The notes beneath the pieces were generated by a model, which was not told the DNA's origin, ran no database searches, and saw only the letters and a list, made by a program, of their open reading frames with translations. Shown here one piece after another: positions 27,623 to 41,251 of a DNA stretch of 41,251 bases (the first letter of the stretch is position 1; each line of letters begins with the position of its first letter). The position numbers and the translations under genes are program-made. Location of the stretch: NCBI GenBank assembly GCA_002269645.1, contig NIVC01003122.1, forward strand, positions 1 through 41,251, in the 5' to 3' direction. The DNA is from Macrostomum lignano. Taxonomy: Eukaryota.

Positions 27623-27947
27623 CTTCAATGAAACTGACTAATCGACAGGCAGTGCCGCCTAGTTTCCAGGTGTTATAAAAAACTTTCACGGCTGACACTG
27701 GCAGGCAGGTGCAGGCAACGAGCAGGTTTGAGCAAGCAAGACTCATCATGATGTAGGAGGTGTGGCGTCGAAGGCCGCTATACTTGAAGCTCAGAAACAG
27801 GAACAGGCCGTTGCCGCCGACCGACAACAGGACGATGGCCGAGTACAGAGCTAGTAGAAAAATATCCGAGCTGCTGAGCTGCCGCGGGCCGAACAGCTTC
27901 TGGTGCAGCAGCTGCATCAGCTGGTGCTGGCTGAGGTTGCCATCAGG
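27623..27947 (-). CDS. Rhodopsin-class peptide-type GPCR, upstream coding exon (N-terminus, TM1-TM2, start of TM3); first in-frame Met 27917
   Basis: TM1 LLALYSAIVLLSVGGNGL (GN motif), TM2 SLACSNLLVACTCLP, ECL1 TWKLG, C3.25 (TACRL). Donor GAAG|GTGAAT at 27622. Frame is open upstream to a pyrimidine-rich acceptor (..CCCCGCCAG|) at 27948 and includes an N-L-S sequon. 5' boundary uncertain. Confidence 0.9.
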
Positions 27948-27977
27948 CTGGCGGGGACCGGAGGAAGAGGGGTGGAA

Positions 27978-30690
27978 TGTCTGAGAATGAGTAGATTAAT
28001 GACTGAGAATGAGTAGGTTGATTTCCGAGAATGAGTAGATTGATGTCTGAGAATGAGTAGATTGATGCCTGAGAATGAGTAGATTGATATGTCTGAGAAT
28101 GAGTAGATTGATGCCTGAGAATGAGTAGATTGATATGTCTGAGAATGAGTAGATTAATGACTGAGAATGAGTAGATTGATTTCCGAGAATGAGTAGATTG
28201 ATGTCTGAGAATGAGTAGATTGATGCCTGAGAATGAGTAGATTGATATGTCTGAGAATGAGTAGATTGATGTCTGAGAATGAGTGGATTGATGCCTGAGA
28301 ATGAGTAGATTGATATGTCTGAGAATGAGTAGATTGATGCCTGAGAATGAGTAGATTGATGTATGAGAATGAGTAGATTGATGTCTGAGAATGAGTAGAT
28401 TGATGCCCGAGAATGACTAGATAGATGTCTGAGAATGAGTAGATTGATGCCTGAGAATGAGTAGATTGATGTCTGAGACTGAGTAGATTGATGCCTGAGA
28501 ATGAGTAGATTGATGCCCGAGAATGAGTAGATTGGTATGTCTGAGAATGAGTAGATTGATGCCTGAGAATGAGTAGATTGATATGTCTGAGAATGAGCAG
28601 ATTGATGCCTGAGAATGAGTAGATTGATGTCCGAGAATGAGTAGATTGATGCCTGAGAATGAGTAGATTGATATGTCTGAGAATGAGTAGATTGATGCCT
28701 GAGAATGAGTAGATTGATTTCCGAGAATGAGTAGATTGATGTCTGAGACTGAGTAGATTGATGCCGAGAATGAGTAGATAGATGCCTGAGAATGAGTAGA
28801 TTGATGCCTGAGAATGAGTAGATTGATGTCTGAGAATGAGTAGATTGATGTCTGAGAATGAGTAGATTGATGCCTGAGAATGAGTAGATTGATACCTGAG
28901 AATGAGTAGATTGATGTCTGAGAATGAGTAGATTGATGCCTGAGAATGAGTAGATTGATGCCCGAGAATGAGTAGATAGATGCCTGAGAATGAGCAGATT
29001 GATGCCTGAGAATGAGTGGATTGATATGTCTGAGAATGAGCAGATTGATGCCTGAGAATGAGTAGATAGATGTCTGAGAATGAGTAGATTGATGCCTGAG
29101 AATGAGTGGATTGATGCCTGAGAATGAGTGGATTGATGTCTGAGAATGAGTAGATTGATGTCTGAGAATGAGTAGATTGATGCCTGAGAATGAGTGGATT
29201 GATGCCTGAGAATGAGTAGATTGATGTCTGAGAATGAGTAGATTGATGTCTGAGAATGAGTAGATTGATGCCTGAGAATGAGTAGATCGATGCCTGAGAA
29301 TGAGCAAATTGATGCCTGAGAATGAGTAGATAGATGCCTGAGAATGAGTGGATTGATATGTCTGAGAATGAGTAGATTGATGCCTGAGAATGAGTAGATT
29401 GATGCCTGAGAATGAGTAGACTGATATGTCTGAGAATGAGCAGATTGATGCCTGAGAATGAGTAGATTTATGTCTGAGAATGAGTAGATTGATGCCTGAG
29501 AATGAGTAGATCGATGCCTGAGAATGAGCAAATTGATGCCTGAGAATGAGTAGATTGATATGTCTGAGAATGAGTAGATTGATGCCTGAGAATGAGTAGA
29601 TTGATGTCTGAGAATGAGTAGATTGATGCCTGAGAATGAGTAGATTGTTGCCTGAGAATGAGTAGATTGATGTCTGAGAATGAGTAGATTGATGCCTGAG
29701 AATGAGTAGATTGATATGTCTGAGAATGAGTAGATTGATGCCCGAGAATGAGTAGATTGATGCCTGAGAATGAGTAGATTGATATGTCTGAGAATGAGTA
29801 GATTGATGCCTGAGAATGAGTAGATTGATGTCAGAGAATGAGTAGATTGATTTCCGAGAATGAGCAGATTGATGTCAGAGACTGAGTAGATTGATGCCCG
29901 AGAATGAGTAGATTGATGCCTGAGAATGAGTGGATTGATGCCTGAGAATGAGTGGATTGATGTCTGAGAATGAGTAGATTGATGTCTGAGAATGAGTAGA
30001 TTGATGTCTGAGACTGAGTGGATTGATGCCTGAGAATGAGTAGATTGATACCTGAGAATGAGTAGATTGATGTCTGAGAATGAGTAGATTGATGCCTGCG
30101 AATGAGTAGATTGATGCCTGAGAATGAGTAGATAGATGCCTGAGAATGAGCAGATTGATGCCTGAGAATGAGTGGATTGATATGTCTGAGAATGAGCAGA
30201 TTGATGCCTGAGAATGAGTAGATTGATTCCTGAGAATGAGTAGATTGATATGTCTGAGAATGAGCAGATTGATGCCTGAGAATGAGTAGATTGATATGTC
30301 TGAGAATGAGCAGATTGATGCCTGAGAATGAGTGGATTGATGTCTGAGAATGAGTAGATTGATGCCTGAGAATGAGTGGATTGATGTCTGAGAATGAGTA
30401 GATTGATGTCTGAGAATGAGTAGATTGATGCCTGAGAATGAGTGGATTGATGCCTGAGAATGAGTAGATTGATGTCTGAGAATGAGTAGATTGATGTATG
30501 AGAATGAGTAGATTTATGTCTGAGAATGAGTAGATTGATGCCTGAGAATGAGTAGATCGATGCCTGAGAATGAGCAAATTGATGCCTGAGAATGAGTAGA
30601 TTGATGTCTGAGAATGAGTAGATTGATGCCTGAGAATGAGTAGATTGTTGCCTGAGAATGAGTGGATTGATGGCTGACATTGAGTAGAAT
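27978..30690. repeat. 22/24-bp satellite (CTGAGAATGAGTAGATTGAT[AT]G[T/C])n, ~120 copies
   Basis: Directly visible; source of the 900-aa minus-strand ORF. Confidence 0.98.
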
Positions 30691-31242
30691 GGTGACATAA
30701 TGATTATATATAAGAATGGCTTGAGTAATTAGCTGGATGCCAAAAGTAGAGTACTCAATACAAATACAAATTTAAATGAAGCAATGCAGCCTACCTTCAC
30801 TGTGTTGATTAGGCTTTTGACTGACATTAGAAAATCAATTTTAAAGTCGTCCACACACACACGCTGTCTTATTCAGTGCTTTGGAGTGATCTTAAATCTT
30901 CAGGTAACTTCACGGAAGATTGCTGATTGGCCAGAGTAAGTGGCCAATAATATTAGAGTGATTTTCGACAAAAATGGACTCAGACTGCTTTAAACTCAAC
31001 TGGAATTTTCCTGTAAAGCAGTGTGGAAAATAAAAAGATGCACGGACACGTAAAGATAAGCCTGTTGCGGACACAGAGGCATCGAATTATGAGCAGTCAA
31101 AGGAAACGTAATTGGACCAATTACCAAAAACTGTGTAGCAGATTATCCTTAGACATCTGCGCTTGCTAGAAACTTGTGACCATAATTTGACCGGTTTCTC
31201 CTCACACTTCAAAATCTGAGTGTCCAGGGCCCGAAACACTTA

Positions 31243-32765
31243 CTAATTGCTATGAGACAGCTAATTCTCATCATTACTAAGCTATGAGACAGCTAATTCT
31301 CATCATTACTAATTGCTATGAGACAGCTAATTCTCATCATTACTAATTGCTATGAGACAGCTAATTCTCATCATTACTAAGCTATGAGACAGATAAGCCT
31401 CATTCATTACTAAGCTATGAGACAGCTAATTCTCATCATTACTAAGCTATGAGACAGCCAAGCCTCATCATTACTAAGCTATGAGACAGCTAATTCTCAT
31501 CATTACTAAGCTATGAGACAGCTAATTCTCATCATTACTAAGCTATGAGACAGCTAATTCTCATCATTACTAATTGCTATGAGACAGCTAATTCTCATCA
31601 TTACTAAGCTATGAGACAGCTAATTCTCATCATTACTAAGCTATGAGACAGCTAATTCTCATCATTACTAAGCTATGAGACAGCTAAGCCTCATCATTAC
31701 TAAGCTATGAGACAGCTAATTCTCATCATTACTAAGCTATGAGACAGCTAAGCCTCATCATTACTAAGCTATGAGACAGCTAATTCTCATCATTACTAAG
31801 CTATGAGACAGCTAATTCTCATCATTACTAAGCTATGAGACAGCTAATTCTCATCATTACTAAGCTATGAGACAGCTAATTCTCATCATTACTAAGCTAT
31901 GAGACAGCTAAGCCTCATCATTACTAAGCTATGAGACAGCTAATTCTCATCATTACTAAGCTATGAGACAGCTAAGCCTCATCATTACTAAGCTATGAGA
32001 CAGCTAATTCTCATCATTACTAAGCTATGAGACAGCTAAGCCTCATCATTACTAAGCTATGAGACAGCTAAGCCTCATCATTACTAAGCTATGAGACAGC
32101 TAATTCTCATCATTACTAAGCTATGAGACAGCTAAGCCTCATCATTACTAAGCTATGAGACAGCTAAGTCTCATCATTACTAAGCTATGAGACAGCTAAT
32201 TCTCATCATTACTAAGCTATGAGACAGCTAAGCCTCATCATTACTAAGCTATGAGACAGCTAAGCCTCATCATTACTAAGCTATGAGACAGCTAAGCCTC
32301 ATCATTATCATCATTACTAAGCTATGAGACAGCTAAGCCTCATCATTATCATCATTACTAAGCTATGAGACAGCTAAGCCTCATCATTACTAAGCTATGA
32401 GACAGCTAAGCCTCATCATTACTAAGCTATGAGACAGCAAGCCTCATCATTACTAAGCTATGAGACAGCTAAGCCTCATCATTACTAAGCTATGAGACAG
32501 CTCAGCCTCATCATTATCTTCATTACTAAGCTATGAGACAGCTAAGCCTCATCATTACTAAGCTATGAGACAGCTAAGCCTCATCATTACTAAGCTATGA
32601 GACAGCTACGTCTCATCATTACTAAGCTATGAGACAGCTAATTCTCATCATGACTAAGCTATGAGACAGCTAATTCTCATCATTACTAAGCTATGAGACA
32701 GCTAAGCCTCATCATTACTAAGCTATGAGACAGCTAATTCTCATCATTACTAAGCTATGAGACAG
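31243..32765. repeat. 32-bp minisatellite (GAGACAGCTAA[TT/GC]CTCATCATTACTAAGCTAT)n, ~47 copies
   Basis: Period 32 (e.g. 31581, 31613); internal inverted repeat ATGAGA..TCTCAT. Confidence 0.97.
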
Positions 32766-33681
32766 GAATAAGCCTAAAGATAGGAATAAGAGTGCAGGTA
32801 ACAGTCCCAGCTCAGCTCATCTTGACGGGATTAATAGAGCAGAGCCGAAAGTCTGCCTGGGGCTGAAATAAGAGATTTCACATTTCATTTCTTATTTGGG
32901 CAGCTGCTCAGTGATTTGATCAAGTCGCGTCCAGGATCGTGGGTCTGTTCCTAGCTGATAGCAAATGCCGTTCACTTTTACTCTTTCTGATTGAAAATTT
33001 ATTGCAAAACAATCACCTGTCGCACTTTCAAGCACACAGATTGCGTACTTTTTATACACAGTGTGTCAAAGTGAACCATGATTTCAATAGCATCGGCGCC
33101 AGCGACAGGGGCCAATGAAAGTTACCGCTGCACCTGCAGGTTGAAGGTTGAATTTCAGTTAAAATATGTTGAATTGAATTACGAGTAGTTTATAAAAACA
33201 TCGTCTGGAAGCTGGTAAAGTGAAAGTACTGAATGCTCTTTATAGAACTTTTGTCGAATGCATGGCATCAAAATTTGAGTTTTACCGCAGACATGAAAAA
33301 TCTATCTTGAAAAAAGACAGTCTCCAGGCGTTTCAGTGCGTTTGACAAGTCTCCAGTAGCATTTCTCTTGATTTTTTAGTCGCTAAACTGATGAAGCCAC
33401 CTTGGACCAGACTCATACATGTACTGTATGCGCTAGCTTCATGTGATCGCCGTAATAGCATTTCAGAAGGGTAATAGCATAAAAATCGTCCATTAAGTGC
33501 TTTAAAATGTAGGTTTTCTCTCTCGTTATTGTATTTGTAAGCAACGCGAATGCTACGTCCTTACGCACCCAGGACGTCTAGCGATCCTTGGACATTGACA
33601 GTTGAAATTGATGGCCTATTGCAGCTAAAACGCTCTCAGTACTACTTAGAAGACTGAGTACTGCAAGGCAACTTGTTATTA

Positions 33682-34849
33682 CGCCGGCTGTCCGGAAAGT
33701 CGTGAGAATGTATCTTAAAAAAGCAGTCAGAACTGTCGGAAAATACAGTAACAGTACTAGTTGGTAATATGATCTCCCGCCCCTTGTGTTGATTACAGCT
33801 TGGCAATGGTCAACGAGTCGCTGAACCTCTCTTTTCAAGCAATCTTCGTCAAGGCCCTCTTGCCCACTGCAACGCAGCTTCTCGAACTTCCTTGTGGTCG
33901 CTGAATGTGGTCGATGATCCCCTTGGCTAAGCCAGCACCTGTTTTTTACTTTGTGCCAGTGTCGTTCAGGTGCACCCATGTCTCATCTTCCACCTCTTTT
34001 GCCAAAAAGTTTTTTCCATGCCCTCGTTGTAAAAAAGCCTGCGAACTTTTTCTCCTCGGAGAGAGCGTGCGGAACCAGACAGCAGAAACTTTTTGAAGGT
34101 GCAATTCTCCGTCAAAATTTTGTGCACTGTTGTTCTTCTAAATTCCAAAAATTCAACGAGGTCCCTGATATAAACCTTTGAATCCTCTTCAACAAGAGCT
34201 CCGAGGAGCTGAGGCCAGGGGAACTGCTTCATCACGGAACTCTAAGTACCATCTGTAAACCGTTGACTGACTGGTGCCGCAACTCCAAAAACTTTGAGTA
34301 GCTCGTCATGACAACTGATAACGCAGATTCCAGGACTGTATCTAGCATTGGCATAAGTCTAGAAGTCTTCCATTTTGAAGAAATGCCTGTCAAAATTTGC
34401 AATCTTGATCACTGCGTTGCGTTGGTTATTGAGCGCATAGAGCATGGTGTGAGCCTTATATTGCCCGCTATTCCAAGCAGTTAGTCAAGTTGTGAGCTTC
34501 ATTTTTCAACCAATTGTCTATGGGATATACGAGGCATCGTATATAAATGCTCTATATGAGGTAAAGCACGCTATTTTCCGGGCACTTTTTTACGCTCGCG
34601 TTTTTTCCCATTGCGAGGCTTGTGGGGGGAATTGCTGACATGTCAAGGCTTACAAGGGCCTGCTGAGGTATATTGCAAAGAGACGCAACATGTAGTTTAT
34701 TAAAAAACTTGTACTGCATTATGGCTCCCCAACGGGGGCGCTGATTGCTAGTATGAGTCTAATATTGAAATTATCTGTGCACCATGTCAACAGCTTGCTT
34801 CTTTCTTGCTCGATTGACACATTCTCACGAATTTCCGCGACAGCCGGCG
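33682..34849 (-). mobile_element. Decayed, internally deleted mariner (Tc1/mariner) transposon
   Basis: ~30-bp TIRs: TA|CGCCGGCTGTCCGGAAAGTCGTGAGAATGT (33682-33711) and ACATTCTCACGAATTTCCGCGACAGCCGGCG (34819-34849). Frameshifted transposase remnants: HDELLKVFG..STVYRWY (HTH), TTVHKIL, SAVW..HALSEE (WVPHEL-like), DETWVH, C-terminal QRLVDHCQAVINTRG. Confidence 0.85.
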
Positions 34850-35617
34850 CGCGTGTCCTTGGGTTTGTGGGTTTCGCGGAGTATTTCCGTTTTGTAATTA
34901 TCTTTCAGAAGAACAATTGTAAAAATAAGTGTCGAACACATTTGGTTGAGTACAGCTGCGTCAGTCGGAACTGAAGTAATTCGTGCTGTAGTTGTGAACG
35001 TATATTTTTCAAAGAAGGTTTGTCAAGACAAAGACGCACAATCGGCGATGTCTGCTTCTCGTCATCGGCGGCCCAATGTGCTTTGTAACAACTCGCAAAA
35101 CTACCCTTAGTACCCTGATCTTTTTCTAGCGTAATCTAAAGTATTTTGTACCTGTCCGCCATTATTTGTGATGGGTACCTGCTAGGATCCTCTGGATGGC
35201 CAGTAGCAAACTTGCTGAGGATTTCTTTCCAGCTATTAATAAGCCGACGGCAAAATAGCGGACCCAAAGTGAATGTGATAAAATGAATTCTTCATCCAGT
35301 CAGACGAGATGCCCCTGGACCCAGTTGGCCGGCTTAAGTGCGCCTACCGCCTCGCGACAGCAGCAGCAGGTTGACAAACCCGAGCCTCAGTCGGTTGCCA
35401 CAAATGTCGCTGTCGCATCAGCCGCTGCCGCGCGGATTATCAAAGCAGACGCTGGGCCAGCTGGACCACTGCGCTTCGAAGCTGTTGATATTCCCGACGA
35501 CTCACTGATGGCGTGCCAGCTTCGGACTCATGCCAACCTCGTCGACGTCGTGGTCGACGTAGTAGTGGGCAAAGCGGACAGCGGCTAGGCGTTTGCCGAT
35601 GGCCGGATAGCCGGAAG

Positions 35618-35791
35618 TCATATCGAAGTCCGCCGACCGAAGCGACAGGCCGGCCCGTCATCCCAGGATCGGCGAGTGGCGTCGATCGTCGAATCAGCGT
35701 TGACGCCAGCGACAGCGGAGCAGATCAGCAGGGCCAGGTAGCTGACAGTCAGGATGGCGGACGATGAGGCAACGGCAGAGACTGGGTGCAT
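35618..35791 (-). CDS. Candidate secreted neuropeptide precursor (57 aa as read; 96 aa ending at 35502 if one base is added in the GGG at 35654-35656)
   Basis: Hydrophobic signal-like N-terminus (AILTVSYLALLICSAVAGVNA-DS), RR, then RF-G-RR in frame 1. The overlapping frame encodes SADFDMTSGYPAI-G-KR. A plausible 5'-UTR intron (GTAAGT 35980; CAG| 35809) supports a minus-strand transcript. Confidence 0.55.
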   Translation of the reverse strand: MHPVSAVASSSAILTVSYLALLICSAVAGVNADSTIDATRRSWDDGPACRFGRRTSI

Positions 35792-36553
35792 GACTTGCGC
35801 AATCACTTCTGGATTTTTTGTGGGTTGGTGGAAACAGGTGAGATGTTGTATACACGTACAATCATAAGTCCTAAACGACTCGAATGACTGGTGTGCATGT
35901 TCGTATTGACCCAGATTGCAAGGTGCACCAGCAGGTAAGAGTTGGACCCTGGGCCCAGAAGAGGTTAAAATACAACTTACGGTGGTGACCTAAACCGGAG
36001 AGCTGATTGAATTTCCAAAGAACCTGACAGGCAATAATTATTAGACGGCTCTGACCTTGACTGAGGCTCGGGCAGGTAAGTGGGAGAGGAAGAATCGTGG
36101 CCACGGAGGGCCGATTATAAAATGGCATCTTGGGCCTGGGCCATGGGCCAATGCTAACGCGATCAGTTGACTTATGAGGGGATGGGCGCAGTGGGCAAAC
36201 AGTCGATACAGTCCTAAACTGATTCGAAGGGAGACGGGCCGGCCACTTCAGCTGAAATGTGGGCTTGCGTGGGTGTGTGTAACATTGGCCCGGGGTTTGG
36301 TTAGCTAACAGAAGGCCAGCCGAATTTGGTCACTGATTCCAACTCATCTCAAAAGCAACCATCGAGATGGTTTACCCGCTTCTAGATCTACATGTATACT
36401 TGCACCTGCTTTTGATTGCTTAAATTGCTTTGTTAATTATAAAATACTATCGATAATTATGCTTAGCTCGTATACGAGAGTATAGGTCGTTTTTTATAGG
36501 TCGATTTTTCATGTTACGCAGTTCCAGGAAGCCTCTTTGGTTGTTGCTTCGCT

Positions 36554-36629
36554 AAAGGACCACTAGAAGTTACCGTTGTAACTCACGACCGATTTTGTAA
36601 CTCACAACGGTAACTTCTAGTGGTCCTTG
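36554..36629. mobile_element. 76-bp hairpin mini-MITE
   Basis: Perfect 25-bp inverted repeat (36555-36579 / 36604-36628) with a 24-nt loop, flanked by direct repeat CTTCGCT (36547-36553 / 36630-36636). Confidence 0.8.
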
Positions 36630-36705
36630 CTTCGCTCACCACAGTGAGTGACACTCGGCTTCCTTTTTGAAGACATGTCATTCCAATGCAGCTAGGCTGT
36701 AAGCC

Positions 36706-37032
36706 AAGAGCTACAAAGATTCGGACACCTCAGCTGAAGAGGCTGTTTTTGCAAAGCTAAATTGTCTTATTGAGCAGCTAATAAGGCTTTCGAACTTAAA
36801 AAATGAAAATCTGGCGTATTTTAGTGAGATACTCGCATCTTCATGCCTTCTGCAGCACCACAGTCCATCCTGCTTCCTACAAGTTCCTGCAGACTATAAT
36901 AACAAAATCAGCAATTCCGAGTGTTAGGCATCTACAGAGAGACTGTCTTCAGGCTTTGAGTAATCACCCTGATGTCAAGGCCACAGCTGAGAACTATAAT
37001 AAGCCAAAGATTGATAGCCTGAATCTGAGAGG
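36706..37032 (+). pseudogene. Frameshifted relic resembling the N-terminal part of a P-element/THAP9-type transposase
   Basis: LIEQLIRLSNLKNENLAYFSEILASSCLLQHHSP (shift) ASYKFLQTIITKSAIPSVRHLQR resembles the EQL..RYS...SP.AY..LR...LPS.RTL.R motif. Segment ends at a GG|GTAAGT donor (37033). Recognised by eye only. Confidence 0.45.
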
Positions 37033-37204
37033 GTAAGTGCTTCTACTTACAATTGATGAAATCTGTACAGGTATTGAATAATTTGAGCCTGGAAAGGAAA
37101 AATGTTCGGCACGCAGCTAGTATCTTCTGTAGAAGCAGCGTAATTCGAGAGAAAAATAATAGAAATTAGCTATAGTGTTATTTAGCTAGAATTGAAGAAA
37201 CGGT

Positions 37205-39102
37205 CTTACTTGACGTAGCTGCAGGGCTGTCCCGGGGGGACACAGCGGGAAGGCACGAACGCCCATTCCGCTAATCCCTAAACGGCCGATGCGTCGCTAT
37301 GGACGAAGGGTTGGCGCCGCCAGGGAGGTCCCCTACTGTCGCAGCAGCTATGGTGCTCTCTGGAAAGGAGAGTTCAGCCCTGCGGGGGCCCAGAGGTACA
37401 TGTAGCGCATGAGCTAATTAAGTTTTCGGGTTTGCACGCTTCAGTAATAGATGTGTGTGGCCCGAGGTAAGTGAGTCTGGCTCGCGTAAAGGCGGGACAG
37501 ATGCTGACAGAAGCAGCCGTGACCTGAGAGGGTCATGGTGGCAGCCCGGATGTCGCTGCTCGAGAGGCGCAGGACGAGCTTCCGGAGCTGGTGAGAGGGC
37601 TGAGGGACAGTGCCTCTGGATTGCATGCAGGTAGTGTAGTTCGCCCAGTCGAGCGGTGCTGGGTCCTGATCCACGCTTTGATTCGCGAGTCGATGACACA
37701 GCCAGGATAACGTTTGGTCCAGCTGCGGTGCTCTTTGCGGGGACAAAAACCACGTAGGGACTCTTTGGACGCTGGCCTTCGCGAAGAAAAAGGGCTCCGC
37801 GAGGTCAGCATCCAAGGAGACCGTCGTCAGCCGCTGGAGCAGCTGCTGAGCGTCCTCCTCACTGCGGAGCAATAAGAACGAATGTGCTTCGCAGCACCAT
37901 CCGCTCAATGCCAATGGAGATTCCCTCCTCGACAGTCAGCTCAATCAGATAGGAGTCAATAGCACTCCACCACATTTTGAAGCTGACCAGTGGTCCAGTC
38001 CTGGTCGCGACCTTGAATGATCACTCCCGGGATTTTGGCCTTGGCCTTCGCCGCAAAGGTAGCTCCCGAAGGAACCTCCTTGTTGGCAGTGCTATTTGTT
38101 GCGCCATGGTTTCGGCCTCAGCAGCCGCAGCAGCATCTCCAGGGAGCGCCCTGGCGAACTACTGGAGCTTCCACCGGCCGCCCGTCTGGTTGCCTTGGGA
38201 CGCCAGTCGCTTCAGCATCCATGGTGGACGCCGCCACTTTGGCCCCGCGGCTCCCTTCTTGGCCTGCCTTTTGGCGCGTTGCTTAGCGCGTTTGCGCTCA
38301 AGCCGAGCCCGCTGAGCTTCGTCGGATCTGCCAGATTTGGCCGGTCCTTTAGGTTCAGAGCCCGCGTTCCCTTAGATCCACCAGTAGAGCTGGCAGGTCT
38401 TTGGGTACTTTTGTTTTGGTAGCTCTCTGGTCGGATCTGCCAGCAGAGCCAGCCGGTCCCTTTGCCACAGTTGAATCAGTCGGTTGGGATCTGCCAGCAG
38501 GGCCGGCCGGTCCGTCGGACTGAGGTTGGGTTTAGAAGGGTCCCCGTCCTAGAATTAGCTTGATTATCCATAGTCGGCTCGAAGGCCATGATAAAGGTTG
38601 GTAGGCTACCCTCAAAGGGGAGCGGTACCCACCCGGCTGCTCCACCTGACCGGAAGTAGGCCAAAAGAACCCTCAAGGCTGGCCCGACACCAGGAGGGGG
38701 ACCGCTAGCGACCGACTACTCCCCGGCCTTCCAACCCTCGGCACGGTCGAACACCTTAGGCATTAGAGGGTACGTTGAGCAGTACCACGGCCTGCGGACT
38801 GGCGAGCCAAACTGCATACCCTAGTTCGGCAAAAGCCACTAGATGGGTTCCCAGCGCCGGCAGCTAGTCAGTCCGGCAGCCCTAGGGTCTGCCTTGAACA
38901 CTCGCGGGGACGGGTACCCCTGGGTCGGCTTGCGAAACTACGTGGGAAGGGGTCTGCGGCTGCCAGCGGCAAATAGAGGGTGCAGACCTCCACCAGCCTT
39001 TACCTGCTGAAGATAGGGGCAGGCGTGGAGCATCGCAGACCTTAGCCCATAGGCCTGGTCTGTCTCATACTTCACTGGCATGCTGAATACGTCCGTGCGA
39101 GC
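37205..39102 (-). mobile_element. Internally deleted non-LTR retrotransposon (LOA/R1-like LINE), 1898 bp
   Basis: Perfect 11-bp TSD GAAGAAACGGT (37194-37204 / 39103-39113). Decayed ORF1-like segments (GPAG[P/S]AGRS repeats, QRARLERKRAKQR, TFAAKAK..VII, VVFVP) are joined directly to an ORF2 C-terminal segment (IKAWIRTQH..W...TCMQSR..P......LRLSSSDIR....LSGHG.F..HL). No APE, RT or RNase H visible. Confidence 0.75.
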
Positions 39103-39211
39103 GAAGAAACGGTTGGTAAGTGGGGCGAAGGGCCCAAACGGTTATACGGGTAACGAGTAAATTCAACTAAAGGGGGTTGAGTGGAGAAGAAAGAAGGGGT
39201 TGACGAGTGGG

Positions 39212-39456
39212 GTCGCCATCATAAACCGAAAAATCACAACTCCGAAAGCCAAAATAGCATTGCTCATTAGCGCTGAAAAAATCACAACCCGAAATATCAT
39301 CATAACTCCGAAAGTGTTAGCAACGCCCATCATAAACCGAAATATCATAAACCGAAAAATCACAACTCCGAAGCCAAAATAGGGTTGGACATTGCTAGAA
39401 CTTTTTTGGAGTTATGATATTTCGAGTTTGTGATATTTCGGGTTTATGATGGGCGA
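39212..39456. mobile_element. Foldback / MULE-like MITE remnant with subterminal ATCATAAACCGAAA repeats
   Basis: CGCCCATCATAAACCGAAATATCA repeats (39214, 39324) are inverted at 39405-39456 (..TTTCGGGTTTATGATGGGCG). No convincing TSD. Confidence 0.5.
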
Positions 39457-39845
39457 TTTCGCAAAAGTAAGTACCACAGAAAAATTCTCGCGAAGTGTTG
39501 CTGCATTGCGAGTTCTAATAGACAGAGACACTACAACATTGAGACGAGTCGTAGCTTACCTGTGACTACCTGCGTATAATGCATCGATTTACGCAAGCTT
39601 GCGACAAGGACCACGTATATATGTTTTGGAATTTAATGCACATATATCCGCGGTACGGTATCACAGCATGAAGGACTACTTTAAGTAAGTATATACGTTA
39701 TACTAATCATCCTTTATTACATGTACGGACCAAAGAAACTCAAATCTATTTACTTTCGTCTTTTGCTGCGCATGTGCACATATATCATGTGTATCGACAT
39801 GCATCTACAACAATAAGTAACTTCATATGAATATTATATATTTAG

Positions 39846-40044
39846 AAACAGAAGAATACAGAAGAATGAGATTTGCTGGTTTTTCAGGTTTGTCACTACA
39901 AAGAGATATTTAAATAAATTGAATTTCAACACCATCCAGTCGGTTTCTTTTTCGTCAAATCCAAAAACCAAGGAGTTAGAAGAGCAGAAATGCACACACG
40001 TACATATGCTTTGCGTACTATTCATCACAGAACCAATACAATCT
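39846..40044 (+). pseudogene. Candidate exon of a decayed AT-rich spliced gene (unidentified)
   Basis: Stop-free frame NRRIQKNEICWFFRFVTTKRYLNKLNF...HMLCVLFITEPIQS between TTTAG| (or TTTTCAG| at 39887) and |GTAAGG at 40045. Confidence 0.35.
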
Positions 40045-40424
40045 GTAAGGAATATATAAATAAGCAAAAAGCTATCGGCTTTTTTAGTAGCTCTATTTTT
40101 AGTATATGGATTAGTCTAATGAAAAAGTTAAATTGTTATACTTCAATTATCGCTTTGGACGCCGATGTTCTGTTTTTCGCAAAATTTAAATTTGTTTCAA
40201 ATTTAGAATTAAGAGATTGTAATTTGATGTATATGGTCTAGAGCTAGAGAATAAGTCTTAGTCGAAGATATATATATTTAGATATATAACATATTATTGT
40301 ATTATATTTATTCATTCCTACTAACATTTTTGTAGTTTGCATGCACTGCCGATTTCATGCAGATTTTATTAAAAGACAATTAAATTTATTTAGATTTTTA
40401 AGACTTCTTGTATAAATTTTACAG

Positions 40425-40536
40425 GGGGTTAAGCAGGTTCGACAACAAGAGAGTTTTCGATGAAAGAAGGAATCTTTAATGATGACGAATCTTTGTCATC
40501 AGTAGTTGTCAGCAGGTGCAGCTGAAATTATAAAAG
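40425..40536 (+). pseudogene. Second candidate exon (disrupted) of the AT-rich spliced relic
   Basis: TTTTACAG| acceptor and AAG|GTAAGT donor. Protein-like GLSRFDNKRVFDE..GIFNDDESL...SAGAAEIIK needs indels and contains a stop. Confidence 0.3.
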
Positions 40537-40874
40537 GTAAGTGTAAAATTCAAATTGTCATTTATAGCTGCACTGTGACTTTAGGTCTAATATGATATAA
40601 ATGCTGCGACACAAGTACAATTTGCTGCTCGATCTAAAAGTATTGTTAATGTTATTATTTTTCTAGGAGCATACTTGCAATAAACTACATAATCAAAGCC
40701 ATTTTTCTTTATAATTATAATACAATTTGTGAGTTGTGATTGAAATTAATAATAAATTTGCTAATGATAATCTAAAGACATATAGCATTTCATAAAAAGT
40801 TTCAAGAAAAAAATCTGTCACTTTCTGCAAGTCTAGGCATTTGCCTCAACCTTGGCTAAACTATTGTGACTAAA

Positions 40875-40965
40875 TTGGCTTAGGGCAAAATGGTCTATGG
40901 GCAAAATTGTTATGGGCAAAATGGTTTAGGCAAAACATAAGGCCAAAATGGTTTAGGGGTAAAAC
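40875..40965. repeat. Short degenerate ~15-bp repeats (GGCAAAATGGTTTA)
   Basis: About five G/GCAAAAT[G/T]GT units, reminiscent of DNA-transposon subterminal repeats. Confidence 0.6.
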
Positions 40966-41251
40966 AACCAATTACCATATGGCTTAGTTGGCTAAGTATT
41001 AAGCTTAAGTCTATATCATGTTATTTATGCTATAAATTTAGATATATATTAATAGTATGTAATATAAGATATATGAGTATGTGATAAATCTAATGACAAG
41101 TATTTAAAGGATTAAACATTTGGTAATAATAGAATTTATTAATATATTAGACAATAAATTATATAAAAGGAAAATATACCCTATCTGAATGCAAATGCAA
41201 ACTAGAATGCAAATAAATATCCAAGGTCTAATTTTAAGATATGATTTGGCA

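What the first reader, a model, noticed from the sequence alone, without database searches (positions are those of the whole stretch)
35502..35808. Candidate neuropeptide precursor with two overlapping frames, each encoding an amidated peptide
Seen: signal-like leader, DSTIDAT-RR, then frame 1 gives SWDDGPACRF-G-RR (an RFamide; stop 35618). Adding one base at the GGG run (35654-35656) gives SWDDGAGLSLRSADFDMTSGYPAI-G-KR plus an acidic tail (stop 35502), with codons strongly C/G-ending. Established: G-KR/G-RR signals convertase cleavage and PAM amidation. Inference: either a homopolymer assembly error hides a 96-aa precursor (YPAI-amide loosely recalls pleurin/ETH-type PRI-amides), or a real allele or frameshift toggles between two peptides (the RFamide loosely recalls lophotrochozoan sulfakinin-type xDYGxGGGRFa). 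Neither matches a peptide I can name with confidence.
Basis: partly seen in the sequence, partly recalled or inferred. Interest (0 to 1): 0.75.

Follow-up and report, generated by a model that had tools for sequence, protein, structure and literature searches.

The report
Flatworm peptide precursor broken by assembly errors
The "two overlapping frames" are almost certainly single-base assembly errors in one of six near-identical copies of a Macrostomum lignano gene, which elsewhere reads as one 151-residue secreted precursor with an amidation-ready peptide ending in YPAI; the RFamide is an out-of-frame artefact.

Summary
The sequence is as described. On the minus strand, a signal-like leader and DSTIDAT-RR run into SWDDGPACRF-G-RR-TSI* (stop 35620-35618). 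Another frame carries ...SGYPAI-G-KR... (stop 35504-35502).

The window is the whole contig NIVC01003122.1 of the PacBio/Canu assembly Mlig_3_7 of the flatworm Macrostomum lignano. The locus is copy g4 of the annotated gene Mlig032804. All five other copies in the assembly have CCC where the window has CC (35653-35652), and all read SWDDGPGLSLRSADFDMTSGYPAI-G-KR in frame.

In the gene region the window differs from the three identical copies only by indels: five single-base changes in base runs, plus one extra CTG. Over 7.7 kb it has 61 private indel events, 50 of them in homopolymers, against 17 private substitutions.

So the frameshift is most likely an assembly error. The RFamide is out of frame in every other copy. 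The stop at 35502 also results from an indel.

The real ORF is probably 151 aa (35791..35334): signal peptide, five dibasic sites and two Gly-dibasic amidation signals. No homologue was found outside M. lignano, no Pfam family matched, and no literature mention was found.

It is best read as an orphan candidate prohormone, already annotated as a hypothetical protein. Interest is low to moderate.

The parts
35981..36086 (-). 5' exon (untranslated) of the annotated model BOX15_Mlig032804g4. The model is 'partial' and reads through it in frame.
   Evidence: P0003 sequence and its position (L003 5166-5634 = window 36086..35618). The donor C|GTAAGT is at 35981/35980.
35809..35980 (-). 172-nt GT-AG intron in the 5' UTR
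   Evidence: The P0003 junction ...GLGHH|QVIAQVMHPV needs the splice 35981 -> 35808. GTAAGT is at 35980 and the acceptor ..TCCAG ends at 35809. The intron is conserved in L001/L002.
35334..35791 (-). Full coding region of the precursor as it should read: ATG 35791, TAA 35336-35334. In the window it is interrupted by five single-base indels.
   Evidence: Five single-base corrections restore a 152-aa ORF. It is identical to the 151-aa P0004 except for one extra Leu. P0004 is encoded identically at three other loci. GC steps mark both ends.
35696..35791 (-). Signal-peptide-like N-terminus (residues 1 to about 28-32). The hydrophobic core is AILTVSYLALLICSAVAGV. Small residues sit at -3/-1 (AVA|G or VNA|D).
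   Evidence: The 11-residue Kyte-Doolittle mean reaches 2.5 at residues 12-22 only. No other hydrophobic segment occurs in the protein. SignalP was not available.
35669..35674 (-). First dibasic site (Arg40-Arg41), after the DSTIDAT propeptide
35652..35653 (-). Frameshift site: CC here, CCC in all five other copies (ORF position +139). This is the error that splits the ORF.
35618..35651 (-). Out-of-frame stretch that reads ACRF-G-RR-TSI* in this contig only. In the true frame it encodes GLSLRSADFDM.
   Evidence: The DNA is identical in the other copies but is read in the other frame.
35589..35668 (-). Candidate peptide 1 plus its processing signal: SWDDGPGLSLRSADFDMTSGYPAI-G-KR. The predicted 24-residue C-terminally amidated peptide has [M+H]+ 2557.166.
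   Evidence: It has the identical amino-acid sequence in the five other copies (P0001, P0002, P0004) and in the window after the one-base correction. Mass.
35524..35525 (-). Second missing C (CC versus CCC, ORF +268). Once the first error is corrected, it puts the TGA at 35504-35502 in frame.
35442..35444 (-). Extra T (TTT versus TT, ORF +350). It creates in-frame TGA TAA in the window.
35431..35431 (-). Missing G (GCG-CGG versus GCGGCGG, ORF +362)
35376..35378 (-). Extra T (TTT versus TT, ORF +416)
35358..35369 (-). (CTG)4 here versus (CTG)3 in the other copies: an in-frame extra Leu
35334..35498 (-). C-terminal extension after the Arg-Arg at residues 99-100 (frame-corrected): EYQQLRSAVVQLAQRLLDNP-RR-QRLMRQRHLWQPTEARVVNLLL(L)SRG-G-RR-T*. 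It has a second Gly-dibasic amidation signal at the very end.
   Evidence: P0004 and P0005, which comes from a second assembly. High GC persists to the TAA and then drops. The codon-position signal is weaker here. L001 and L002 stop before it.

Best explanation
The window is contig NIVC01003122.1 of the Macrostomum lignano DV1 assembly Mlig_3_7. The locus is copy g4 of gene Mlig032804, which is present in at least six near-identical copies in this partly duplicated genome.

The gene has a short 5' UTR exon, a 172-nt intron, and one coding exon. That exon encodes a 151-residue secretory pre-propeptide with this layout:
- signal peptide (about 28-32 aa)
- DSTIDAT, then RR
- SWDDGPGLSLRSADFDMTSGYPAI, then G-KR
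- an acidic spacer, then RR
- EYQQLRSAVVQLAQRLLDNP, then RR
- QRLMRQRHLWQPTEARVVNLLLSRG, then G-RR-T

Inferred mechanism: co-translational signal-peptide removal, cleavage at the dibasic sites by a PC2-type convertase, carboxypeptidase trimming, and conversion of the exposed C-terminal Gly to an amide. This would yield a 24-residue ...SGYPAI-amide and perhaps a basic 25-residue ...LLLSRG-amide. These would be released as neuropeptide- or hormone-like signals.

In the window copy the reading frame is broken five times by single-base length changes in short base runs. The first is CCC to CC at 35653-35652. These are residual long-read consensus errors near the contig end, not biology. The 'SWDDGPACRF-amide' is what the translation happens to read after the first error.

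What is shown: the copy structure, the indel pattern and the intact ORF elsewhere. What is inferred: secretion, processing, amidation and signalling function.
For: Identity of the locus:
- The protein search returns only M. lignano BOX15_Mlig032804 g3, g6 and g4.
- g4 lies on a 41251-bp contig identical to the window.
- g1, g5 and one more locus encode an identical 151-aa product.

The frameshift is an error:
- In a 1-kb six-way alignment, the window differs from the three identical copies only by indels and by no substitution (coordinates).
- Over 7.7 kb the window has 61 private indel events: 50 lengthen or shorten a run of the same base, and 44 are deletions against 17 insertions. It has 17 private substitutions. 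The other contigs have 0-16 private indel bases.
- Pairwise indel events are 66-80 for the window against any other copy, and 3-26 among the others.
- Against L005 over 33-41 kb there are 73 indel events and 18 substitutions. Over 35-39 kb the counts are 38 and 3. Window 27400-28000 is 100% identical to L005.
- The assembly was made with Canu from PacBio reads and polished with Pilon using short reads. It has 180 Mb of duplicated blocks at 95% identity or more, where short reads map ambiguously (PMC5730564).
- Five one-base corrections restore a 152-aa ORF.

It is a real gene:
- The annotation derives from RNA-seq-guided transcript assembly plus TransDecoder.
- The 5' UTR has a canonical intron.
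- GC steps coincide with the ATG and the TAA of the 151-aa ORF.
- Third-position GC is 0.75 in the first 68 codons, like the neighbouring GPCR exon at 0.79.
- The same frame is intact in a model from the independent ML2 assembly.

Prohormone anatomy:
- One N-terminal hydrophobic segment, five dibasic sites and two Gly-dibasic signals.
- M. lignano has a nervous-system PC2 homologue whose knock-down is lethal (PMC4490696).
Against: - Raw reads could not be inspected, so a real one-base deletion in this copy is not formally excluded.
- No homologue was found outside M. lignano among 5.8 billion proteins (word-indexed search) or 1.84 billion representatives (full phmmer). No Pfam family matched. 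Purifying selection across species is therefore not shown.
- Each candidate peptide occurs once only. There is no peptidomic or expression-site evidence.
- The C-terminal extension has a weaker codon-position signal (third-position GC 0.60).
- Two copies (L001, L002) share a GG to G change at ORF +277 that ends the protein at 96 aa. They also share other variants. The 96-aa form may therefore be a real allele, and the extension may be dispensable or non-coding.
- SignalP was not available. The n-region of the leader has no Lys or Arg.
Confidence: 0.78

Rival explanations
1. The one-base deletion, and the other four, are real. On this reading the window copy is a decaying paralogue or haplotype (a pseudogene) of Mlig032804, produced by the recent duplication in the DV1 line. 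If translated at all, its truncated product would end in ...ACRFGRRTSI.
For: The DV1 genome really does hold several copies, so redundancy would permit decay. One other copy, L002, has a private non-homopolymer T deletion and real substitutions. Raw reads were not checked.
Against: The window has 61 private indel events against 17 private substitutions, and 82% of the indels are in homopolymers. They are spread evenly through non-coding DNA as well. Substitution divergence from L005 is about 0.05% over 35-39 kb. By general knowledge, real sequence divergence gives far fewer indels than substitutions. The excess is confined to part of the contig: 27400-28000 is identical to L005.
Confidence: 0.08
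2. This is dual coding or programmed frameshifting: one mRNA yields both an RFamide and a YPAI-amide by ribosomal slippage at the G/C run.
For: Both frames carry a Gly-dibasic signal in the window sequence.
Against: In the five other copies the YPAI frame is contiguous with the signal peptide and needs no shift. In those copies the RF-G-RR reading is out of frame and unreachable without a frameshift. GGGCCGGCC is not a recognised slippery heptamer (general knowledge). The apparent toggle is a difference in the DNA of one contig, not an RNA-level event.
Confidence: 0.01
3. The gene is real but is not a neuropeptide precursor. It could be a lineage-specific small secreted or membrane-anchored protein, for example a gland or adhesive secretion product. 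It could also be a transcript whose ORF is fortuitous, with dibasic sites that simply reflect Arg-rich, GC-rich sequence.
For: There are no homologues and no family match. Each peptide is single-copy. Arg codons are frequent in 63% GC sequence. A 55-codon open extension is not improbable by chance; my estimate from composition is about 0.17. M. lignano has many orphan genes (general knowledge).
Against: A signal-like leader, a dibasic site soon after the predicted cleavage, a Gly immediately before KR, and a Gly-Arg-Arg one residue from the C-terminus together form the classic prohormone layout. The protein is short, lacks Cys outside the leader and has no domain. GC steps and third-position GC support translation.
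Confidence: 0.25

Closest known systems
Flatworm neuropeptide prohormones (npp/spp genes of Schmidtea mediterranea and Schistosoma; Collins et al. 2010, PMC2953531)
   Same: Small secretory precursor: an N-terminal signal peptide, peptides flanked by dibasic sites, C-terminal Gly as amide donor, no folded domain. Many planarian spp genes are likewise orphan families defined only by this anatomy.
   Different: No sequence relation was detected. None of the conserved flatworm motifs listed in that paper is present: YIRF, FDPIxF, YLTGGIRY, YHFFRL, FVRL/FVRI-amide, xDxPW-amide, AVRLMRL-amide, GLRxMRx-amide. The strings YPAI, PAIGK, AIGKR, GYPA, FDMT and SRGGRR do not occur in its eight supplementary files held as text. 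There is no peptidomic support here.
RFamide peptides, including sulfakinin/CCK-type
   Same: The window's broken frame ends in Arg-Phe-Gly-Arg-Arg. If it were real, this would give a C-terminal RF-amide.
   Different: The RF-G-RR reading is out of frame in five of six copies. It has no Tyr (the sulfation site) and no sulfakinin-type core; the defining motif is recalled from general knowledge. It is an artefact, not a member.
PRX-amide peptides
   Same: Amidated aliphatic C-terminal residue, with Pro three residues from the end.
   Different: The defining Pro-Arg-X-amide is absent; here the end is Pro-Ala-Ile-amide. The peptide is 24 residues long and acidic (pI 4.05). No sequence match was found.
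Residual homopolymer indels in long-read (PacBio CLR) assemblies of duplicated genomes
   Same: Single-base length errors in short base runs. Deletions outnumber insertions. Errors cluster in part of a contig and resist short-read polishing where near-identical copies make mapping ambiguous. The result is split ORFs in one copy but not its twins.
   Different: Nothing differs; this is the ordinary phenomenon. The assembly method is documented in PMC5730564.

Membership tests
Classical neuropeptide/peptide-hormone precursor (prohormone) | N-terminal signal peptide | tested here: inconclusive
   There is a single N-terminal hydrophobic segment (11-residue Kyte-Doolittle mean up to 2.5 at residues 12-22), with small residues at -3/-1 (AVA|G, VNA|D). 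No dedicated predictor (SignalP) was available.
Classical neuropeptide/peptide-hormone precursor (prohormone) | Candidate peptides flanked by dibasic convertase sites | tested here: met
   RR40-41, KR67-68, RR99-100, RR121-122 and RR149-150 in P0004. The first two are present in all six copies.
Classical neuropeptide/peptide-hormone precursor (prohormone) | Gly immediately before a basic site (amide donor) | tested here: met
   ...YPAI-G-KR in all copies. ...SRG-G-RR-T* in the 151-aa copies.
Classical neuropeptide/peptide-hormone precursor (prohormone) | Processing enzymes present in the organism | tested here: met
   Literature only. An M. lignano PC2 homologue (RNA815_2403.2) is expressed in the nervous system and its RNAi is lethal (PMC4490696). 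I did not look for the amidating enzyme.
Classical neuropeptide/peptide-hormone precursor (prohormone) | Conservation of the mature peptide in related species | tested here: inconclusive
   Only M. lignano copies were found. Genomes and transcriptomes of other Macrostomum species are not searchable with these tools.
Classical neuropeptide/peptide-hormone precursor (prohormone) | Expression in neurons or endocrine cells, and detection of the processed peptide | not testable with these tools
   No expression atlas or peptidome is at hand. Mlig032804 is not mentioned in the main text of any held paper.
RFamide / sulfakinin-type peptide | An in-frame C-terminal RF-Gly-basic signal that is reproducible across copies | tested here: not met
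   It is in frame only in the window contig. It is out of frame in L001, L002, L004, L005 and L006.
PRX-amide (pyrokinin/ETH/pleurin-type) | C-terminal Pro-Arg-X-amide | tested here: not met
   The C-terminus is Tyr-Pro-Ala-Ile-Gly-Lys-Arg, with no Arg before the last residue.
CRH/DH44/ELH-type peptide (considered for the 47-residue C-terminal region) | Detectable match to the CRF family profile (Pfam-A, which holds the CRF family PF00473) | tested here: not met
   hmmscan of P0004 and of the C-terminal 51 residues against Pfam-A at E<=10 returned no family. The resemblance (…QRLL…RRQ…, an amidated end, a length of about 45) comes from my memory only.
Programmed ribosomal frameshift / dual-coding gene | The same DNA sequence in all copies, with both frames reachable from one start | tested here: not met
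   The two readings correspond to different DNA: CC in the window, CCC in five copies.

The most novel reading that the evidence does not exclude
Mlig032804 encodes a Macrostomum-specific amidated peptide or peptides (...SGYPAI-amide and perhaps ...LLLSRG-amide). The cognate receptor would be the equally orphan rhodopsin-type peptide GPCR that lies about 7.4 kb downstream on the same strand (27917..23274). That would make a lineage-restricted, physically linked ligand-receptor pair. Separately, the 96-aa and 151-aa ends may be real alleles between subgenomes that switch the second peptide on or off.
Probability: 0.06. Interest if true: 0.6.

Novelty: new member of a known kind. Interest (0 to 1): 0.25.

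Why it matters
As flagged, the finding dissolves. Two amidated peptides toggled by a frameshift would have been remarkable, but the toggle is an assembly artefact.

What remains is modest but useful:
- A concrete correction for one locus of a widely used flatworm assembly: five one-base errors at named positions.
- A warning that the last roughly 8 kb of this contig carries about one indel per 100 bp.
- A testable orphan prohormone candidate in a regeneration and reproduction model, with exact predicted peptide masses. Neuropeptide repertoires outside planarians and parasitic flatworms are poorly known.

Tried and rejected
- Pfam scans of both window frames, the 96-aa and 151-aa forms, the C-terminal 51 residues and the upstream ORF found no family for any precursor-related sequence.
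- Rfam over the whole window found nothing.
- The word-indexed search of 5.8 billion proteins and the full phmmer search of 1.84 billion representatives returned only M. lignano copies.
- Literature string searches for PAIamide, YPAIG, GYPAI, SRGamide, LLLSRG, DFDMTSG and Mlig032804 gave nothing relevant. The planarian prohormone supplements contained none of the strings.
- Koziol et al. 2016 and McVeigh et al. 2009, the two papers most likely to list M. lignano npp genes, are not held. I therefore cannot exclude that the gene already has an npp number.
- The look-up of encoding contigs for the fused 699-aa model found no record.
- I considered the two indels around 35525 and ORF +277 to be a compensating pair, which would have implied selection on the frame. 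I rejected this once the three 151-aa copies showed that each contig carries a single deletion relative to CCC...GG.
- I considered a splice instead of a frameshift between the two frames. No donor-acceptor pair fits, and the other copies are collinear.
- I considered orcokinin/pedal-peptide likeness (FD..SG[FY]) and CRH/ELH likeness of the C-terminal region. Both come from memory only. The spacing differs for the former, and the latter has no profile match. Neither is claimed.
- I did not run structure prediction. A single-sequence model of a disordered prohormone would not discriminate between the explanations.
Full report
**1. What is in the sequence**

- From ATG 35791 the product is MHPVSAVASSSAILTVSYLALLICSAVAGVNADSTIDATRRSWDDGPACRFGRRTSI, ending at TGA 35620-35618.
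- A second frame is open from just after the GAT GAC codons. It reads RAGLSLRSADFDMTSGYPAIGKRLAAVRFAHYYVDHDVDEVGMSPKLARHQ, ending at TGA 35504-35502.
- The GGG run is at 35656-35654.

The window as a whole is eukaryotic and very rich in tandem repeats. It has no Rfam match.

**2. Where the window comes from**

I searched with the frame-joined 96-residue protein and found three proteins, all from the flatworm Macrostomum lignano:
- BOX15_Mlig032804g3: 96 aa, 97% identical over the full length.
- g6: 86 aa.
- g4: 98 aa, partial, on a contig of exactly 41251 bp.

The look-up of g4 shows that the window is the whole contig NIVC01003122.1 of assembly GCA_002269645.1. The cluster of g3 also holds a 151-aa protein, P0004. 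It is encoded identically at three further loci: g1, g5 and one more.

The gene therefore exists in at least six near-identical copies. This fits the published description of the assembly: 180 Mb in duplicated blocks of at least 95% identity in the DV1 line (PMC5730564).

**3. The frameshift**

All five other copies have GAC GGG CCC GGC CTG (D G P G L). The window has GAC GGG CC- GGC CTG.
- The missing base is a C in the run at 35653-35652.
- The restored residue is Pro, not Ala.
- In a 1-kb six-way alignment, L004, L005 and L006 are identical to each other. The window differs from them only by indels and by no substitution.

Within the ORF the indels are as follows:

| ORF position | Change in the window | Window coordinates |
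|---|---|---|
| +139 | C missing | 35653-35652 |
| +268 | C missing | 35525-35524 |
| +350 | T extra | 35444-35442 |
| +362 | G missing | 35431 |
| +416 | T extra | 35378-35376 |
| +424 | CTG extra (in frame) | 35369-35358 |

Two further homopolymer indels lie in the 5' intron region.

**4. Error or biology?**

Over a 7.7-kb six-way alignment, the window stands out:
- It has 61 private indel events. Fifty of them lengthen or shorten a run of the same base. Deletions number 44 and insertions 17.
- It has only 17 private substitutions.
- The other contigs have 0-16 private indel bases and similar numbers of private substitutions.
- Pairwise indel events are 66-80 for the window against any other copy, and 3-26 among the others. 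Substitution distances are comparable across all pairs.

Against L005 the pattern is sharper:
- Window kilobases 33-41 show 73 indel events and 18 substitutions.
- Kilobases 35-39 show 38 indel events and 3 substitutions.
- Window 27400-28000 is 100% identical to L005 with no gap.

An indel-to-substitution ratio well above one is the signature of residual long-read consensus error. So are the concentration in homopolymers, the bias toward deletions and the confinement to one part of a contig. Divergence does not produce this pattern.

The assembly method fits. It was built with Canu 1.4 from PacBio reads and polished with Pilon using short reads. By my inference, short reads map ambiguously among near-identical copies, so polishing fails there.

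Applying the five one-base corrections to the window restores a 152-aa ORF. It is identical to P0004 apart from one extra Leu from the CTG repeat.

I put the probability that the 35653-35652 frameshift is an assembly error at about 0.9. Raw reads could not be inspected.

**5. Consequences for the two 'peptides'**

The RF-G-RR reading is the out-of-frame translation of CTT CGG TCG GCG G. In the true frame this encodes L R S A D. It is in frame in this contig only, so the RFamide is an artefact. There is no toggling between two peptides.

The stop at 35502 is also an artefact of an indel.
- In the window it arises from the missing C at 35525-35524.
- In g3 and g6 the same ARHQ* end arises from a different change: GG to G at ORF +277.
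- L001 and L002 share that change, an 8-bp indel and two substitutions. It may therefore be a real haplotype variant, and this stays open.

**6. The real gene**

The annotated models come from RNA-seq-guided transcript assembly (StringTie/TACO) with TransDecoder. A minus-strand transcript is therefore implied for this gene family, although reads cannot be assigned to one copy.

Gene structure:
- The g4 model contains a canonical GT-AG intron at 35980-35809 in the 5' UTR. It is conserved in the other copies.
- GC content steps from 0.43 to 0.62 exactly at the ATG. It falls from 0.67 to 0.40 just after the TAA of the 151-aa ORF, not at the 96-aa stop.
- Third-position GC is 0.75 in the first 68 codons. 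The neighbouring GPCR exon gives 0.79. In the last 55 codons it is only 0.60.
- A 699-aa UniProt model (A0A1I8IKR7) matches residues 1-148 of the 151-aa form at 100% identity, so the frame is uninterrupted there. I take it to derive from the earlier ML2 assembly; that provenance is inferred from the accession series. This is partly independent support.

I conclude that 151 aa is the more likely full length, at about 0.7.

**7. Anatomy and likely mechanism**

P0004 has one hydrophobic segment, at residues 11-30. Small residues sit at -3/-1 (AVA|G or VNA|D). No other hydrophobic stretch occurs.

Dibasic sites lie at 40-41, 67-68, 99-100, 121-122 and 149-150. Gly precedes the second and the last.

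The inferred products, with masses, are:
- DSTIDAT.
- SWDDGPGLSLRSADFDMTSGYPAI-amide: 24 aa, pI 4.05, [M+H]+ 2557.166.
- An acidic 30-residue spacer.
- EYQQLRSAVVQLAQRLLDNP.
- QRLMRQRHLWQPTEARVVNLLLSRG-amide: 25 aa, strongly basic, possibly with N-terminal pyroglutamate.

M. lignano has a PC2 homologue with nervous-system expression (PMC4490696). Secretion, cleavage, amidation and signalling are all inferred from established prohormone biochemistry. None is shown here.

**8. Comparison with known families**

No Pfam family matches any form of the protein.

Sequence searches:
- The full phmmer search of 1.84 billion representatives found only M. lignano sequences.
- String searches of the paper library for the peptide motifs and the gene identifier found nothing relevant.
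- The conserved flatworm motifs tabulated by Collins et al. 2010 are absent. The motif strings do not occur in that paper's held supplements.

The RFamide is not in frame in the real gene. YPAI-amide lacks the Pro-Arg of PRX-amides.

Two resemblances of my own are from memory only and are not supported by any test: an orcokinin/pedal-peptide-like FD..SG[FY] motif, and a CRH/DH44/ELH-like C-terminal region.

Koziol et al. 2016 and McVeigh et al. 2009 could not be read. A prior npp designation therefore cannot be excluded.

**9. Surroundings**

About 7.4 kb downstream on the same strand lies a two-exon rhodopsin-type GPCR.
- Exon 1 is 27917..27623 and exon 2 is 24118..23274.
- Its best solved relatives are the orexin, NPFF, QRFP and CCK receptors, at E about 1e-8.
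- Its only hit at E<=1e-5 among 5.8 billion proteins is an M. lignano paralogue with 67% identity.

The 699-aa UniProt model joins an upstream ORF, the precursor and GPCR exon 2 while skipping exon 1. That is most likely an ab initio artefact.

The adjacency of an orphan peptide gene and an orphan peptide-type receptor is noted as a low-probability lead only.

**10. Verdict**

An assembly error does hide a longer precursor. The dual-frame and RFamide idea is not supported.

The underlying gene is an already annotated hypothetical protein. It is best read as an orphan candidate prohormone, at about 0.55-0.6. Interest is low to moderate.

Noticed in passing
window 23274-27917 (minus strand); exon 1 27917..27623, exon 2 24118..23274: This is a two-exon rhodopsin-type GPCR (Pfam 7tm_1). 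Its closest solved relatives are the orexin, NPFF, QRFP and CCK receptors, at only E~1e-8. Its only hit at E<=1e-5 is an M. lignano paralogue (P0006, 67% identity). The position of the TM3 'DRY' motif appears to read L-R-A. The gene look-up for this contig stretch (window 25618-41251) lists only the precursor, so at least GPCR exon 1 has no called gene there.
   Followed up: partly
window 35334-37914 and 23274-24118, versus P0005 (UniProt A0A1I8IKR7): A 699-aa UniProt model of M. lignano fuses three things in one frame: an upstream ORF, the whole 151-aa precursor (read through its 5' UTR) and GPCR exon 2. It uses a GT in the codons GGC GGT AGG as the splice donor and skips GPCR exon 1. It is probably a gene-prediction artefact. 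A real read-through transcript was not excluded.
   Followed up: partly
window 37418-37914 (minus strand): Two overlapping ORFs (37441..37914 and 37418..37753) correspond to one continuous stretch of P0005 (...SSEEDAQQLLQRLTTVSLDADL...VVFVPAKSTAAGPNVILAVSSTRESK). The window therefore carries a further frameshift here. The 265-residue N-terminal part of P0005 that contains this stretch has no Pfam match.
   Followed up: partly
window 33000-41251 versus L005 (NIVC01005075.1): Indel density is about 1 per 100 bp (73 events in 8.25 kb) with only 18 substitutions. Window 27400-28000 is identical to L005. The two contigs look like the same haplotype assembled twice, and the window's end is poorly polished.
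   Followed up: yes
L001 and L002, ORF position +277 (window equivalent about 35516): Copies g3 and g6 share a GG to G change that ends the protein at ...ARHQ* (96 aa). They also share an 8-bp indel and two substitutions further downstream. This suggests a real haplotype with a truncated precursor rather than two independent errors.
   Followed up: partly
L002 (NIVC01005171.1), gene 8873-9133: Copy g6 has several private changes: an in-frame 3-bp deletion in the signal peptide, four substitutions (two Val to Ile, one Asn to Thr, one synonymous), and a non-homopolymer T deletion right after the G-KR site. The deletion changes the whole C-terminal part. It is the most diverged copy.
   Followed up: partly
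window 9705-13494; also 928-1227, 5086-5304, 6339-7258, 8635-9324, 15922-16320, 18630-19448, 21346-22167, 24934-26273, 26882-27534, 27977-30688, 31240-32765: There is an unusually dense set of tandem arrays. They include a 3.8-kb (TAGA)n array, a 2.7-kb 22-mer array and a 1.5-kb 32-mer array. The 22-mer and 32-mer arrays lie between the precursor and the GPCR. This is in line with the published 15% simple and tandem repeat content of this genome.
   Followed up: no
L001/L004/L006 1-5311 (opposite strand to the precursor); window equivalent about 40500-41251: In the paralogous loci the upstream neighbour is a CDC14-like dual-specificity phosphatase gene (Pfam DSPn and DSPc). By collinearity with those loci, only its end would fall within the window.
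   Followed up: no
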